In this document: positions 23,134 to 28,685 of the stretch, in pieces
Numbering within the stretch: position 1 is the stretch's first letter
How the letters are laid out: every line of letters begins with the position of its first letter
The notes under the pieces: generated by a model
What the model saw: the letters and a program-made list of their open reading frames with translations, nothing else
What the model was told of the DNA's origin: nothing
Database searches by the model: none
IMG/VR virus record: IMGVR_UViG_3300005289_000016
Coordinates: 62,001-126,000 of that record
Length of the DNA stretch: 64,000 nucleotides
Reading direction: 5' to 3' (one strand)
Translations under genes and position numbers: made by a program

Positions 23134-23170
23134 TGTGATTTCCTAATAAAAAAAGTTTAGCCGACCTACT

Positions 23171-23614
23171 ATGAGTAAAGTACAAATAATTGGCCAGTCC
23201 ATTTTCCATATTACTGGGGTTCAAAAGATCATGTCCACACTGACGAAGAGCCAGGGTCTTCAAGCCCTGCACCAGCAGTCGCTGAAACTACTGCTGAGTC
23301 TTGCTAAATCCACTGTCGATGCTGCTCGCTACGACTGGACCCGTTCTCCTCACGGTAAACGTGTTGCAGAACTGACCCGCATCATCAAGCGTGATCTCGA
23401 AGAGATGAAGAAACGTCTCAATGGGATCAAGGCTAAGCACGACAAGGAGATCACCTCCGCCGTGCTGAATAATCCCAATCACCCTGTGCTTCTGAAAGCC
23501 GGTGGTGATTATTACGATTTCATTGACCAGACCACTTCGACCATTACTCCCCATTCCGGTGAGCTGATGGATCTGATTGCTGATCTGGTTCGTTCCGAAA
23601 AGCAGACGGCTTAA
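23171..23614 (+). CDS. Hypothetical helical protein
   Basis: Divergent from the gp79-like gene; start may be ATG 23230. Confidence 0.65.
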   Translation: MSKVQIIGQSIFHITGVQKIMSTLTKSQGLQALHQQSLKLLLSLAKSTVDAARYDWTRSPHGKRVAELTRIIKRDLEEMKKRLNGIKAKHDKEITSAVLNNPNHPVLLKAGGDYYDFIDQTTSTITPHSGELMDLIADLVRSEKQTA

Positions 23615-23627
23615 ATAAGGCAGAGTC

Positions 23628-25226
23628 ATGAGCGACGACCAGAAACCCCAGAATGAAGGAATGGACGAGGTAGAGTTGGATACGTCTAACCTGATCCCAA
23701 ACGTAGATGCTTCGGCTGAATCGTTTGCTCAGGCGACCCAACAAGCAGCGGCCACTGCTAAAGCACCTCAAGAAGCACATGTACCTGAAGTCACCATGGA
23801 AATCGAAGGGCTGTGGAATGAGTTCGACATCCCGAACACTCACGTCACCATGCCAGAACCGATGTTCAAGCGCCAAGCCATCGACCCGCGTCGTCCGGGT
23901 TTGGTAGCGTTGAAAGTCGGTATGGATGAGATGGGGATGATCATGGAACACCGTGGTCTGAACGAACTCTCCGACGAAAAGGCCAAGGCCCTGTCTCCTG
24001 AAGACAAGCGTCTGGTCAACCTGTCCCGTAGTCTGTCGGCCATCTGGCAAGACTTGTACTTCGACGGCATCGACAAAGAAGGCGACTGGCACAACACCGT
24101 GCTGCACAACGAAACCAAACTGGGTGCTGGTAAGGTCAAACCTGCCAACATGAAAGACCCGGTCATGGCAATCCGTGCTACCTTCGGCCAAGGCTCGATG
24201 GTACAGGTTCCGTTGTGGAACACTGGTCTGTGGATCACCTTCCGTGCTCCGACCATCCAGGCCCTGCTGGACTTCGAACAGAAGACCCGCATGGAGAAGA
24301 TGAACCTCGGTCGTTCCTCCAACGGCATGGTGTTCTCGGCAGTGGAAGTCTACACTGTTGAAACCTACATGCGCTTCGCTCTGGAGCACGTGGTCTCTGT
24401 GAACTATGCGTTCGAGACCGGTGAGACCGTGGACGAACTGTTGCAGGTCATTCGCAGCCGTGACTACCAGCAAGTGCTGTGGGGTCTGGCCTGTGCAATG
24501 TACCCAGACGGCTACCCACTGCGTCAGCCATGCGTGGCCGATCCAGACAAGTGCAAGCACGTCGACGAAGTACTGATCAACTTTGCTCGTATGGGCTTCG
24601 TGGATCGTTCGAAGATCTCGGCAAGCCAAGCACTGAAGATGGCTTCGCGTAACAGCAAGCGTGATGCCAAGTGGCTGGCTGAATACCAGGCCGAGTTCAC
24701 CTTCTTCGAGAAGCGTGTCGCACTGGGCAACAACCTGACGGCTGTTCTGCGCGTGGCTTCGCTGGGCGATCAGATCGACTCTGGCCACATCTGGGTCGAC
24801 GGTATCTCCAAGGCCACCAACGATGCGTTCGGTGCACGTCTGTCCGAGATGGACCGCGTCCGACACATCATGCGCAGTGGTGCGTTGACGAACCTGCGTC
24901 AGTACAGTCACTGGATCGCTCACTTCGAGCATGCGCTTGACCCCGATAGCGCCCCGGTGATCTACGATGACCTGGTCAACAAAGACCGTATCCTCGAGAT
25001 GCTGTCCGAAGACCCGGAAGTCGGTGACAAGTTCACCACCGAGATCCTTGACTGGATCAAGAAGTCGACTGTCTCGTACATCGGCTTGCCGAAAGTCAAG
25101 TGCCCGGCCTGCCAGAAGATGCCTGAGGACCAGACGCACCCGCACCTGATCCCCATCGACATCGGTTACGTTTTTTTCACCCTAGCCGCACTGAAGATCA
25201 GCCAAGTAGAAGGCGCGGCAGTCTAA
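23628..25226 (+). CDS. Conserved 532-aa protein with Cys motifs, possibly a baseplate-hub/tail assembly chaperone; slippery site near its 3' end
   Basis: CVADPDKCKH and CPACQK motifs; GTT TTT TTC at 25170-25178. Confidence 0.7.
   Translation: MSDDQKPQNEGMDEVELDTSNLIPNVDASAESFAQATQQAAATAKAPQEAHVPEVTMEIEGLWNEFDIPNTHVTMPEPMFKRQAIDPRRPGLVALKVGMDEMGMIMEHRGLNELSDEKAKALSPEDKRLVNLSRSLSAIWQDLYFDGIDKEGDWHNTVLHNETKLGAGKVKPANMKDPVMAIRATFGQGSMVQVPLWNTGLWITFRAPTIQALLDFEQKTRMEKMNLGRSSNGMVFSAVEVYTVETYMRFALEHVVSVNYAFETGETVDELLQVIRSRDYQQVLWGLACAMYPDGYPLRQPCVADPDKCKHVDEVLINFARMGFVDRSKISASQALKMASRNSKRDAKWLAEYQAEFTFFEKRVALGNNLTAVLRVASLGDQIDSGHIWVDGISKATNDAFGARLSEMDRVRHIMRSGALTNLRQYSHWIAHFEHALDPDSAPVIYDDLVNKDRILEMLSEDPEVGDKFTTEILDWIKKSTVSYIGLPKVKCPACQKMPEDQTHPHLIPIDIGYVFFTLAALKISQVEGAAV
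25172..25178 (+). other. Candidate -1 programmed ribosomal frameshift site T_TTT_TTC
   Basis: X_XXY_YYZ heptamer in frame. The -1 frame is open from TGA 25124-26 through ATG 25268 to the stop at 25678; hairpins lie downstream. Confidence 0.7.
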
Positions 25227-25267
25227 CCCTTCCGTTAGGCTACCATGCTGGCGATCGTCGCTTTGGG

Positions 25268-25678
25268 ATGGAGAAGCTGGAGAACAAAGAGGACATCACT
25301 GCCCTCGATGAAGTGTTGTCGAAGTTCGATGGGACTCTCGACAGCATTCCAGCCCAGATCATCATCACAGAGTGCTACGACGATTACTTCGGTGTTTACG
25401 AGCAAAGCTCCCAGGGCTCTAGTCCTTACGCTCTGGTTGCGATGCACGAGGCTGAAGACCTGGCATTGGTTGACCCGTTTGATGTGTACCTTGAACGATA
25501 CTTGGTCGCCAACGTACTCAAGTACACCGGGATGTCACTTGAAACATTCATGAAGATGCCCCGCGATCGTGCGGAAGCAGTCCTCAAGCGATGTGACAGC
25601 GTGTCGACGAAAGAAGACACAGAGGTCAGCAAGTTGATGAACGGTGTCCCGGGTCCTGCCGGTGGAAAGAAAAAGTAA
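25268..25678 (+). CDS. Small protein, probably the C-terminal extension of the upstream gene via -1 frameshift
   Basis: No obvious RBS before ATG 25268; the frame is open from the slippery site; KYTGMSLETFMKMP segment resembles tail-chaperone extensions. Confidence 0.7.
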   Translation: MEKLENKEDITALDEVLSKFDGTLDSIPAQIIITECYDDYFGVYEQSSQGSSPYALVAMHEAEDLALVDPFDVYLERYLVANVLKYTGMSLETFMKMPRDRAEAVLKRCDSVSTKEDTEVSKLMNGVPGPAGGKKK

Positions 25679-25680
25679 GG

Positions 25681-25702
25681 GGAGGGCTTCGGCCCTCCTT
25701 TT
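25681..25702 (+). terminator. Rho-independent terminator
   Basis: GGAGGGC-TTCG-GCCCTCC-TTTT. Confidence 0.85.
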
Positions 25703-25703
25703 A

Positions 25704-25730
25704 TTCGATTTGGTTAAGACGATACATTAT
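25704..25730 (+). promoter_or_regulatory. Putative phage early promoter TTCGA-N14-TACATTAT
   Basis: Exact consensus copy. Confidence 0.7.
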
Positions 25731-25756: not shown

Positions 25757-26218
25757 ATGTCATTAACGATCGTGGAACAAGACCTGTTTGACGTCCCTGC
25801 CGACACCCGTGTGATCACGATCAATCTGGTCGGGGCAATGGGAGCCGGTGTGGCTCGAACTGCCCGTAACACGGTCCCAGGGCTTCACAAGCACTATCGC
25901 AAGATGTACCCAACGATTGAGCCAGGGAACATCATCACGTATAAACACGAAGACATGCGTTACCTGCTGGTGCCTACCAAACTGGACTGGAGAGATTCTT
26001 CTCCACGGAGTCTGGTGATTCATCACATCAACAAGTTAGCCGTCTTGGCCAGCCGGCACAGACTCGGACGCATTGTCTTACCACCATTAGGTTGCGGTCA
26101 TGGCGGGTTGAGTTGGGAAGACGATATTCAGTACGTCTACCGGGCTCTCTATCCGTTCATTGAAGCAGACATCACAGTCGCTCTAGGCGACAGCAGGAGA
26201 AAGAATGGAAGGTCCTAA
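25757..26218 (+). CDS. Macrodomain protein, DarG/Poa1p-like ADP-ribosylhydrolase
   Basis: INLVGAMGAGVA, LVPTKLDWR and LPPLGCGHGGLSW match the DarG-type macro motifs. Confidence 0.8.
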   Translation: MSLTIVEQDLFDVPADTRVITINLVGAMGAGVARTARNTVPGLHKHYRKMYPTIEPGNIITYKHEDMRYLLVPTKLDWRDSSPRSLVIHHINKLAVLASRHRLGRIVLPPLGCGHGGLSWEDDIQYVYRALYPFIEADITVALGDSRRKNGRS

Positions 26219-28615: not shown

Positions 28616-28685
28616 TTATGCCCCGTCTTTCAACTAAGTCCTTGTATTCGTGTAAAAAAATACACGATGGTTATAGTCTATGTGA

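What the first reader, a model, noticed from the sequence alone, without database searches (positions are those of the whole stretch)
23628..25678. Unannotated -1 programmed frameshift fusing two conserved genes (G/GT-like chaperone pair)
Seen: the 532-aa ORF reads TAC GTT TTT TTC near its end, a T_TTT_TTC heptamer at 25172-78. The -1 frame is closed by TGA at 25124-26, then open (F-H-P-S-R-T-E-D-Q-P-S-R-R-R-G-S-L-T-L-P-L-G-Y-H-A-G-D-R-R-F-G) straight into ATG 25268, which has no Shine-Dalgarno sequence. Potential stimulators start 6 nt downstream (GCCGC 25185/GCGGC 25215; AGTCTAAC/GTTAGGCT). The predicted fusion is about 683 aa. Established: many tailed phages make tail-assembly chaperones G and GT this way (lambda, P2, Mu), normally next to the tape-measure gene. 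Inference: the same strategy here, beside the virion RNAP operon; I am not aware of it being reported for phiKZ-like phages.
Basis: partly seen in the sequence, partly recalled or inferred. Interest (0 to 1): 0.72.

Follow-up and report, generated by a model that had tools for sequence, protein, structure and literature searches.

The report
Conserved -1 frameshift in jumbo-phage core gene
Near the end of a core gene of nucleus-forming jumbo phages (the phiKZ gp77 family), a run of T's very probably makes some ribosomes slip back one base and add a 166-residue domain that genome annotations list as a separate small gene, which would change how more than 200 phage genomes, phiKZ included, should be annotated.

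Summary
ORF A (23628-25226, 532 aa) carries T_TTT_TTC at 25172-78. The -1 frame is closed by TGA 25124-26 and then open into ORF B (ATG 25268-25678).

Comparative evidence for a real recoding event:
- All 90 scorable related loci (phiKZ, PhiPA3, Erwinia, Ralstonia, Xanthomonas, Bacillus and metagenomic relatives) have a T5-T8 run at the same Phe-Phe.
- In all of them the -1 frame is open for 152-190 codons from the run. The +1 frame is open for a median of 12 codons.
- The "intergenic" 41 nt evolve as -1-frame codons.
- A conserved H-x5-FG motif lies upstream of any start codon in most genomes. In phiKZ the only start, PHIKZ076.4, sits in the middle of the domain.
- ATG 25268 is absent from some close relatives.

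The 683-aa A-B fusion is therefore very likely real. Ribosomal -1 slippage is the most likely mechanism; transcriptional slippage is not excluded.

The "G/GT chaperone" homology is not supported. A is Chimalliviridae core gene cg18, a distant relative of T4 gp26 (baseplate-hub assembly). B has no known relative. The proposed RNA stimulators are not significant and not conserved. I found no prior report. No protein-level evidence exists yet.

The parts
23628..25226 (+). ORF A, 532 aa. It is the 0-frame product and the ortholog of phiKZ gp077, PhiPA3 gp074, 201phi2-1 gp136 and Chimalliviridae core gene cg18. It is a distant relative of T4 gp26.
   Evidence: phrog_4585 at E 2e-89. tblastn finds it in 222 phage records. 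Orthology notes are in the PhiPA3 record. cg18 is listed in the supplement of PMC10299810. AF2 model pLDDT is 81. BFVD and atlas link it to the gp26 family.
25124..25126 (+). TGA that closes the -1 frame upstream of the shift site.
   Evidence: Sequence. The -1 frame is open from 25127.
25172..25178 (+). Slippery heptamer T_TTT_TTC (T7 run 25171-25177), encoding the conserved Phe-Phe. This is the proposed -1 shift site.
   Evidence: A T5-T8 run sits at the same Phe-Phe in all 90 scorable loci. The motif is a canonical X_XXY_YYZ in 54 of 66 non-redundant loci and at least a U_UUN A-site tetramer in all 66. U_UUU_UUY is among the efficient motifs in E. coli (PMC4066793).
25178..25226 (+). Dual-coding overlap. 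The 0 frame encodes A's C-terminal tail and the -1 frame encodes the start of the extension.
   Evidence: This stretch is identical in DT01, although the whole finding region (23628-25678) is only 77.6% identical to DT01. Variation is suppressed at all three codon positions, 0.07-0.17.
25227..25267 (+). Apparent intergenic spacer that is in fact coding in the -1 frame. It holds the conserved H-x5-FG motif.
   Evidence: Substitution periodicity in the -1 frame is 0.23/0.18/0.60 for codon positions 1/2/3. The alignment with relatives is ungapped. The motif is conserved across the family.
25268..25678 (+). ORF B as a gene caller would list it (136 aa, phrog_12109). It is proposed to be the C-terminal part of the frameshift extension (25178-25675, 166 codons).
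   Evidence: ATG 25268 is replaced by ATT, TTA or CTT in the close relatives L015, L017, DT01 and L020. The AF2 model of the extension has pLDDT 80 and is mostly helical.
25185..25241 (+).
   Evidence: Both are present in the minimum-energy fold at -20.7 kcal/mol, but z is only -1.42. The second hairpin is not conserved in DT01. The family-wide mean z is +0.23. A role is not supported.
25674..25705 (+). Intrinsic-terminator-like hairpin with a T tract directly after B's stop. It is the likely 3' end of the A-B transcript.
   Evidence: LucasX has an annotated terminator at the same relative place. RNA contigs of a phiKZ-type phage end about 6-10 nt after B's stop.

Best explanation
ORF A and 'ORF B' form one recoded gene. 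Most ribosomes translate A to its stop at 25224-26 and make the 532-aa protein. A fraction slip back one base on GTT_TTT_TTC (T_TTT_TTC, 25172-78), with tRNA-Phe in the P and A sites re-pairing on UUU UUU. These ribosomes then read CAC CCT AGC ... in the -1 frame, cross A's stop and the apparent intergenic spacer, and finish at 25676-78. The result is a 683-aa A-B fusion (junction ...GYVFF|HPSR...).

Shown here:
- the site and the frame arrangement;
- their conservation in every relative examined;
- the coding signature and conserved motif upstream of any usable start codon.

Inferred:
- that the shift is ribosomal rather than transcriptional;
- that slippage is driven mainly by the U-rich motif and is therefore probably low-level;
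- the function. A is a distant T4 gp26-like protein (gp26 is a baseplate-hub assembly factor). The two products share the A body, and the minor form carries an extra helical B domain. The likely logic is that of lambda G/GT: a fixed ratio of a short form and an extended form of an assembly factor, with the extension supplying a second binding function. Confidence in the function is about 0.4, much lower than in the recoding itself.
For: (1) Family-wide conservation. In 90 of 90 scorable loci (11 GenBank phages plus IMG/VR contigs, at 22-88% aa identity) a T5-T8 run lies 8-37 codons before A's stop. From the run the -1 frame is open for 152-190 codons (median 163). The +1 frame is open for a median of 12 and at most 105 codons.
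(2) B is annotated in the -1 frame of A in 11 of the 12 loci compared (the window plus 11 GenBank phages).
(3) The shift window is pinned. A -1-frame stop lies as close as 2 codons upstream of the A-site codon (3 codons or fewer in 5 loci), and A's stop lies as close as 9 codons downstream. The T-run is the only shared slippery element in that interval.
(4) The spacer 25227-67 shows -1-frame codon periodicity of 0.23/0.18/0.60 and aligns without gaps.
(5) The -1 product aligns across 66 loci, with a conserved H-x5-FG motif just after or across A's stop. In most loci this motif lies upstream of any ATG, GTG or TTG.
(6) In phiKZ the only start-like codon in the 167-codon -1 ORF is the ATG of PHIKZ076.4, inside the conserved domain. 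DT01 has no start before a TTG 40 codons into the conserved region. ATG 25268 is not conserved in close relatives.
(7) Codon choice. At the site the first Phe is TTT in essentially all loci, against 34% TTT at other Phe codons of the same genes and 22% genome-wide.
(8) Motif class. 54 of 66 loci have U_UUU_UUU, U_UUU_UUC or U_UUU_UUA, and the other 12 keep U_UUY in the A site. In E. coli U_UUC and U_UUU are the second and third most shift-prone tetramers, and H_HHU_UUY heptamers are among the most efficient (PMC4066793).
(9) No in-frame A-B fusion occurs among the top 150 of 1762 family representatives, so the split arrangement is itself conserved.
(10) RNA contigs of a phiKZ-type phage cover A's 3' end, the T-run and B in one piece with no indel at the run. 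A terminator follows B in the window.
(11) A's 0-frame tail (FFTL..Q...I) is also conserved, so both products appear to be under selection.
(12) Co-folding of A with the extension scored 0.39 against a best control of 0.00. The tool's verdict is weak support; in its calibration the mark was reached by 58 of 80 solved complexes and 2 of 110 mismatched pairs, and scores of 0.60 or under are more often wrong than right. The runs agree in at least 47% of contacts, and the partner pLDDT is at least 54.
Against: - There is no direct evidence for the trans-frame protein. No proteomics, ribosome profiling or reporter data were available.
- No conserved downstream stimulatory RNA structure was found: family mean z is +0.23, and the window scores z -0.84 against gene-internal controls and -1.42 against shuffles. 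No upstream SD-like stimulator was seen.
- 12 of 66 loci lack a canonical heptamer.
- The window does have an ATG at 25268, so some independent B synthesis cannot be excluded in this phage.
- T7-T8 runs could also support RNA-polymerase slippage, and assembled RNA contigs cannot reveal minor indel species.
- The functional assignment is weak. The Pfam T4_baseplate model matches only 1 of 66 members, at E 0.017. hhalign against T4 gp26 gives probability 18% over 28 columns. No solved structure matches.
- Neither gp77 nor gp76 is mentioned in the 40-protein phiKZ virion atlas. This fits a non-structural assembly factor, but it is also uninformative.
Confidence: 0.8

Rival explanations
1. The same A-B fusion is made by transcriptional slippage. 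The phage (or host) RNA polymerase adds one extra U while copying the T7 run, so a subpopulation of mRNAs encodes A-B in a single frame.
For: The conserved element is a homopolymer, T7 or T8 in most loci. UUUUUUU is known to be avoided in genes, partly because of transcriptional slippage (PMC4066793). Chimalliviridae use unusual multisubunit RNA polymerases whose slippage behaviour is unknown (own knowledge). The deposited RTH11 sequence has a run one T shorter than the family pattern, which shows that the run length is labile or error-prone.
Against: The run is only T5-T6 in 19 of the 66 non-redundant loci (12 of the 66 also lack a canonical heptamer). That is too short for the slippage known in bacteria, which usually needs 8-9 or more (own knowledge). 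Every locus nevertheless keeps a U_UUN A-site tetramer in A's frame. RNA contigs of a phiKZ-type phage show the genomic T7 with no indel listed at the run, although contigs hide minor species.
Confidence: 0.1
2. There is no recoding. A and B are two separate genes, and B starts at ATG 25268 (or at the annotated starts in other phages).
For: An ATG exists at 25268, and several relatives have some start codon somewhere in the -1 ORF. Every GenBank annotation seen lists two CDSs. Weak or absent SD sequences are common in this window.
Against: The -1 frame shows codon periodicity and a conserved motif upstream of the starts. Start positions are scattered and non-homologous. ATG 25268 is lost in L015, L017, DT01 and L020. 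In phiKZ and DT01 the conserved N-terminal half of the domain has no start codon. The -1 frame relationship and the openness back to the T-run are kept in 90 of 90 loci, which independent genes would not require.
Confidence: 0.04
3. Termination-reinitiation or another form of translational coupling: ribosomes that finish A restart on B without frameshifting.
For: The A stop and the B start are close (41 nt here, 17-26 nt in some relatives) and lie on one transcript.
Against: Reinitiation still needs a start codon, and it would leave the conserved, codon-periodic stretch between A's stop and the first start untranslated. The gaps reach 89-218 nt in DT01, AgentSmith and phiKZ. It also does not explain why the -1 frame stays open back to the T-run, nor the TTT codon choice.
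Confidence: 0.02

Closest known systems
Lambda gpG/gpGT-type tail assembly chaperone frameshift (also P2 E/E+E' and Mu; Xu, Hendrix and Duda 2004; reviewed in PMC5009743)
   Same: A -1 slip on a heptamer near the 3' end of a phage morphogenesis gene yields a minor, C-terminally extended product that shares the body of the major product. The arrangement is conserved although the sequences diverge. [quoted passage not shown]
   Different: The upstream ORF is 532 aa rather than about 100-150 aa. The pair is not located between tail-tube and tape-measure genes; it lies beside a virion RNA polymerase subunit gene. There is no sequence or fold similarity to chaperone families. The slippery motif is U-rich, whereas lambda uses G_GGA_AAG.
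T4 gene 26 (gp26, baseplate hub / hub assembly; Pfam PF12322 T4_baseplate), which also makes a second product, gp26', by internal initiation
   Same: The model of A matches predicted structures of proteins of about 250 aa annotated as the T4-like baseplate hub assembly protein or hub subunit (E 6e-5 to 1e-3, TM by target 0.5-0.57). 85 of 100 named ESM-atlas feature hits fall in clusters carrying PF12322. Both share a C-terminal '..VP.KCPxCGK'-type motif at the same relative position. Both genes give two related products; 26 and 26' are annotated in NC_000866.
   Different: A is 2.5 times longer and has an extra variable N-terminal region. The Pfam model does not reach significance (1 of 66 members, E 0.017). 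T4 makes its second product by internal in-frame initiation, not by frameshifting. The neighbouring T4 gene 51 is divergently transcribed and unrelated to B.
Structural-protein frameshifts that add a C-terminal domain (T7 capsid 10A/10B; Listeria phage PSA capsid and tail proteins, +1) - named from own knowledge and a reference list
   Same: A large, complete protein receives an alternative, longer C-terminus in a fraction of molecules through slippage close to its stop codon.
   Different: Those products are virion components. Neither gp77 nor gp76 is mentioned in the phiKZ virion atlas. The gene family is also different.

Membership tests
-1 programmed ribosomal frameshift cassette | X_XXY_YYZ slippery heptamer in the 0 frame that allows P- and A-site tRNA re-pairing | tested here: met
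   T_TTT_TTC at 25172-78 in A's frame. The motif is canonical in 54 of 66 relatives and keeps an A-site U_UUN in all 66.
-1 programmed ribosomal frameshift cassette | An overlapping -1 ORF that is open from the site, extends well beyond the 0-frame stop, and is conserved in orthologs | tested here: met
   The -1 frame is open for 152-190 codons in 90 of 90 loci; the +1 frame has a median of 12 codons.
-1 programmed ribosomal frameshift cassette | The trans-frame region is under protein-coding selection upstream of any independent start | tested here: met
   Codon periodicity is 0.23/0.18/0.60 in 25227-67. The conserved H-x5-FG motif lies upstream of start codons. phiKZ and DT01 have no start there.
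-1 programmed ribosomal frameshift cassette | Downstream stimulatory RNA structure (hairpin or pseudoknot) 5-9 nt after the heptamer | tested here: inconclusive
   The window hairpins fold at -20.7 kcal/mol with z -1.42. The family mean z is +0.23 and only a few lineages have strong hairpins. Pseudoknots were not tested. Some known sites, such as lambda G/GT, work without a strong stimulator.
-1 programmed ribosomal frameshift cassette | Direct detection of the trans-frame protein, and dependence on the heptamer | not testable with these tools
   No proteomic or ribosome-profiling data were reachable. Only assembled RNA contigs were available.
Lambda G/GT-type tail assembly chaperones | Gene pair located between the tail tube (or major tail) gene and the tape-measure gene | tested here: not met
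   The neighbours are a virion RNA polymerase beta subunit, a gp79-like and a gp78-like protein, and a macro-domain protein.
Lambda G/GT-type tail assembly chaperones | Small upstream protein (about 100-150 aa) with the chaperone fold or a chaperone Pfam family | tested here: not met
   A is 532 aa. Neither A nor B has a Pfam hit, and no chaperone appears among the Swiss-Prot AFDB or PDB matches. The P2 GpE atlas hit for B scores 0.85, which is only a lead.
Lambda G/GT-type tail assembly chaperones | -1 frameshift near the 3' end that gives an extended minor product | tested here: met
   See the frameshift rows above. The shift lies 15 codons before A's stop.
T4 gp26 family (PF12322 T4_baseplate) | Significant match to the family's sequence model | tested here: not met
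   There is no hit for the window protein. Only 1 of 66 family members matches PF12322, at E 0.017. hhalign against T4 gp26 gives probability 18% and E 1.3e-3 over 28 columns.
T4 gp26 family (PF12322 T4_baseplate) | Shared fold with family members | tested here: inconclusive
   BFVD Foldseek gives E 6e-5 to 1e-3, probability 1.0 and TM by target 0.5-0.57 to several annotated gp26-like proteins. Atlas features link 85 of 100 named hits to PF12322 clusters. Both sides are predictions, and no solved gp26 structure was found.
T4 gp51 (hub assembly catalyst), considered for B | Sequence-profile similarity to the gp51 family | tested here: not met
   hhalign of the B profile against T4 gp51 gives probability 0.45%. 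Against an 8-member gp51 alignment it gives 0.14%.

The most novel reading that the evidence does not exclude
The B domain exists in all nucleus-forming jumbo phages only as the frameshift extension of core gene cg18 (phiKZ gp77 joined to 'gp76.4'). The slippage-set ratio of the gp26-like protein to its extended form controls baseplate-hub or tail assembly. That would be an independently evolved functional analogue of lambda G/GT, in a different protein family and at a different genomic position.
Probability: 0.35. Interest if true: 0.75.

Novelty: new variant of a known kind. Interest (0 to 1): 0.63.

Why it matters
- phiKZ-like (Chimalliviridae) phages are a major model system (phage nucleus, therapy candidates), and their core genome has been catalogued. 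cg18 (phiKZ gp77) is listed there simply as 'hypothetical protein', and the B region is not listed as a core gene.
- If the frameshift is real, a conserved protein of about 680 aa is missing from every annotation and from every proteomics search database for this family.
- More than 200 deposited genomes then carry a spurious small ORF with arbitrary start codons, such as PHIKZ076.4 (80 aa).
- Genetic screens that score the two ORFs separately would need re-reading.
- It would be a recoding signal that has persisted while protein identity fell to about 22%, apparently with no conserved RNA stimulator. That makes it a clean natural test case for heptamer-only frameshifting on U-rich motifs.
- It suggests that fixed-ratio short and long assembly factors arose more than once in tailed phages.

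Tried and rejected
- Downstream RNA stimulators. I folded the window segment and the 60 nt after the run in 66 loci against gene-internal controls. There is no family-wide signal, and the second hairpin is not conserved in DT01.
- B as a T4 gp51 relative. A tempting 'DDYFG' match to T4 gp51 disappeared when a gp51 family profile was used.
- B as a tail chaperone. There is only a sub-threshold atlas lead to P2 GpE and no Pfam hit.
- Solved-structure relatives of A or B. None was found by Foldseek PDB, VIA-align wide, or sequence profiles against the PDB.
- RNA-seq of this phage. No run holds it (best share 0.28, from metagenomic relatives). Runs holding a phiKZ-type phage are kept only as assembled contigs, so minor +1 U species cannot be measured.
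- A second frameshift candidate elsewhere in the genome (TTTTTTA in an ORF at genome 214352..216715, minus strand). It looks like a spurious antisense ORF with an implausible -1 product, so I dropped it.
- My crude ORF caller picked the 533-aa antisense ORF instead of A, so the genome-wide heptamer census is only approximate.
- Natural in-frame A-B fusions. None occurs among the top 150 family representatives. The 686-687-aa BFVD hits (phiEaH2 and a metagenomic myovirus) were not checked and may simply be N-terminally extended.
I repeated it with permitted rows only.
- PCH45 transposon and proteomics data for the two ORFs are not given in the main text of the preprint.
Full report
**1. Observation**

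The sequence is as described. ORF A (23628..25226, +, 532 aa) reads TAC GTT TTT TTC at 25167-78. This gives a T7 run (25171-77) and the heptamer T_TTT_TTC (25172-78) in A's frame. The -1 frame has TGA at 25124-26 and is then open to 25678. It contains no ATG, GTG or TTG before ATG 25268. A slip on TTT TTC followed by reading CAC... gives 517 + 166 = 683 aa.

The site is not a chance feature.
- The 276,032-bp genome (G+C 54%) has only five T runs and two A runs of 7 or more bases.
- Phe is TTT in 22% of codons.
- Phe-Phe is encoded TTT-TTY in 7 of 152 cases (approximate gene set).

**2. What the genes are**

The closest named relative is Pseudomonas phage pPa_SNUABM_DT01, at 77.6% nucleotide identity. 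A is phrog_4585 and B is phrog_12109, both of unknown function. Neither has a Pfam hit.

tblastn finds A in 222 phage records, all jumbo phages of Pseudomonas, Erwinia, Salmonella, Serratia, Ralstonia, Vibrio, Klebsiella, Xanthomonas, Burkholderia and Bacillus. Record notes identify A as the ortholog of phiKZ gp077, PhiPA3 gp074, 201phi2-1 gp136 and EL gp47, and B as PhiPA3 gp073 and 201phi2-1 gp135. In the Chimalliviridae core-genome table phiKZ gp077 is core gene cg18, 'hypothetical protein'. The next entry is gp079, so B is not listed (supplement of PMC10299810). A profile search of 1.84 billion representatives finds 1762 family members.

Synteny is fixed in most of the fetched GenBank loci (the Bacillus phage AgentSmith locus and the truncated PCH45 and phiKZ loci do not show the RNA polymerase gene). 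The order is a virion RNA polymerase beta subunit and a gp79-like gene on one strand, then a gp78-like gene, A and B on the other.

**3. Comparative test of the frameshift**

I collected 11 GenBank loci and 80 IMG/VR loci.
- In the window and 10 of the 11 GenBank phages the annotated B is in the -1 frame of A.
- In all 90 scorable loci a T5-T8 run lies 8-37 codons before A's stop. It encodes the conserved Phe-Phe of '..P.D....FFTL..'.
- From the run the -1 frame is open for 152-190 codons (median 163). The +1 frame is open for a median of 12 and at most 105 codons.
- In 66 non-redundant loci the motif is U_UUU_UUU (35), U_UUU_UUC (18), U_UUU_UUA (1), G_UUU_UUY (11) or G_GUU_UUU (1). Every locus therefore keeps at least a U_UUN tetramer for A-site re-pairing.
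- The first Phe codon at the site is TTT throughout, against 34% TTT at the other Phe codons of the same genes.
- A -1-frame stop lies as close as 2 codons upstream of the A-site codon, and A's stop as close as 9 codons downstream. Entry into the -1 frame is therefore confined to a short interval whose only shared feature is the T-run.

**4. The 'intergenic' region is coding**

Among nine close relatives the 41 nt between A's stop and ATG 25268 align without gaps. They vary with a 0.23/0.18/0.60 pattern at -1-frame codon positions 1/2/3. This matches B proper (0.41/0.23/0.63) and mirrors A upstream in its own frame (0.12/0.02/0.38). The dual-coding overlap is suppressed at all positions, at 0.07-0.17.

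The -1 products of 66 loci align over their whole length. They share a conserved H-x5-FG motif immediately after (in some lineages across) A's stop, followed by Y....GI, PL..VA.H..ED and EFL.LPR blocks. Start codons in this frame are scattered and non-homologous.
- ATG 25268 is ATT in L015 and L017, TTA in DT01 and CTT in L020.
- DT01 has no start until a TTG 40 codons further on.
- PhiPA3's ATG lies inside the H-x5-FG motif.
- In phiKZ the 167-codon -1 ORF opens 4 codons before the run ACT TTT TTT ACT. Its only start-like codon is the ATG of the 80-aa PHIKZ076.4, in the middle of the domain.

A conserved coding region that no start codon can reach, contiguous with a conserved slippery run, is the signature of recoding. 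A's own 0-frame tail is conserved too, so both products seem to matter. None of the top 150 family representatives is an in-frame fusion.

**5. Mechanism**

Ribosomal -1 slippage is the most economical reading. The motif class is right: in E. coli U_UUC and U_UUU are the second and third best tetramers, and H_HHU_UUY heptamers are among the most efficient (PMC4066793). Lineages with only T5-T6 keep the A-site tetramer.

Transcriptional slippage at the T run would give the same protein and is not excluded. RNA contigs of a phiKZ-type phage carry the genomic T7 and span A's 3' end, the run and B in one piece, ending just after B's stop. However, contigs hide minor species, and no raw reads were available.

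Across 66 loci the 60 nt after the run fold no better than other windows of the same genes (mean z +0.23). A few lineages do have strong hairpins. Slippage may therefore rest mainly on the motif and be low-level, as in lambda G/GT. That is an inference.

A terminator-like hairpin follows B directly (25674-25705).

**6. Function**

AlphaFold models are confident: A has pLDDT 81 and the extension has pLDDT 80 and is mostly helical. No solved structure matches either, and nothing matches in Swiss-Prot AFDB.

Against predicted viral structures A matches its jumbo-phage orthologs. More weakly, it matches several proteins of about 250 aa annotated as the T4-like baseplate hub assembly protein or hub subunit (E 6e-5 to 1e-3, TM by target 0.5-0.57). 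Language-model features place 85 of 100 named neighbours in clusters carrying PF12322 T4_baseplate. hhalign against T4 gp26 aligns only the C-terminal '..VP.KCPxCGK' motif (probability 18%). The Pfam model itself matches 1 of 66 members at E 0.017.

I therefore call A a probable distant gp26 relative, not a demonstrated member. T4 gp26 and gp51 have been proposed to act as chaperones or cofactors in morphogenesis (PMC9024508). T4 gene 26 also yields a second product, 26'.

B is unrelated to gp51 and to chaperone families. Neither gp77 nor gp76 is mentioned in the 40-protein phiKZ virion atlas. Co-folding of A with the extension gave a score of 0.39 against a best control of 0.00. The tool rates this as weak support and notes that scores of 0.60 or under are more often wrong than right.

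**7. Comparison and novelty**

The expression logic is that of lambda G/GT (PMC5009743), but the defining features of that family are not met. Those features are position between the tube and tape-measure genes, a small chaperone fold, and family models.

Full-text searches for frameshifting together with phiKZ, jumbo phage, Chimalliviridae, SPN3US, 201phi2-1 or gp77 found no description of this site. All annotations seen list two CDSs. Subscription-only papers were not searched, so prior mention cannot be ruled out.

**8. Verdict**

- Recoding that fuses A and B is very probably real and family-wide (about 0.9).
- The ribosomal -1 mechanism is probable (about 0.8 overall).
- The role as a baseplate-hub assembly factor is tentative (about 0.4).
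- The G/GT homology and the proposed RNA stimulators are not supported.

Noticed in passing
L092:2198-2701 (phiKZ NC_004629, about 71945-71442, minus strand): In phiKZ the B region is annotated only as the 80-aa ORF PHIKZ076.4, with a 218-nt 'gap' after gp77. The -1 frame is open for 167 codons from the run ACT TTT TTT ACT. The predicted product is a gp77-gp76.4 fusion.
   Followed up: yes
L008:3513-3519 (Xanthomonas phage RTH11, OQ790161): The deposited T-run is one T shorter than the family pattern. As a result the canonical A tail (FFTLLGQR) is in the -1 frame, the B domain is in the +1 frame, and the annotated A runs on for about 60 codons in a non-conserved frame. This is either a homopolymer sequencing error or a real length variant.
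   Followed up: partly
window 23544-25145 (-): A 533-aa antisense ORF covers almost all of gene A, one residue longer than A itself. A longest-ORF gene caller picks the wrong strand here. There is no evidence that it is coding.
   Followed up: no
window 25674-25705 (+): A strong terminator-like hairpin (14 pairs, then a T tract) overlaps B's stop codon. LucasX has an annotated terminator at the equivalent position, and RNA contigs of a phiKZ-type phage end there.
   Followed up: partly
window 25757-26218 (+): The next gene encodes a 153-aa protein with a near-threshold Macro domain match (PF01661, E 3.4e-4, 21 bits against a cutoff of 22) and a hit to phrog_335 'phosphatase'. DT01 has one extra CDS between B and this gene.
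   Followed up: no
L094:5803-7229 (T4 genes 26, 26' and 51): T4 gp26 and gp51 are adjacent, divergently transcribed hub-assembly genes. Both carry a '..(I/V)P(V)..CPxCGK' motif like the one near A's C-terminus (hhalign probability 18% and 31%). This may be a shared zinc-knuckle-like element or an old paralogy.
   Followed up: partly
L005:3631-3766 (Erwinia phage Simmy50; also RAY, L058): In Agricanvirus records the downstream ORF is annotated with a 136-nt overlap into A, starting from an upstream in-frame start. This shows how arbitrary the start calls for B are across genomes.
   Followed up: partly
window 23148-23154 and 28654-28660: These are the only two A7 runs in the whole genome, and both lie in this window. 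The first sits in the AT-rich divergent intergenic region upstream of the gp78-like gene and may be promoter context.
   Followed up: no
genome G000:C1:214008-216715 (-), outside the window: An in-frame TTTTTTA with a 149-codon open -1 frame lies in a 788-codon ORF. Both the ORF and the -1 product look like non-coding antisense sequence, so I judged it spurious.
   Followed up: partly
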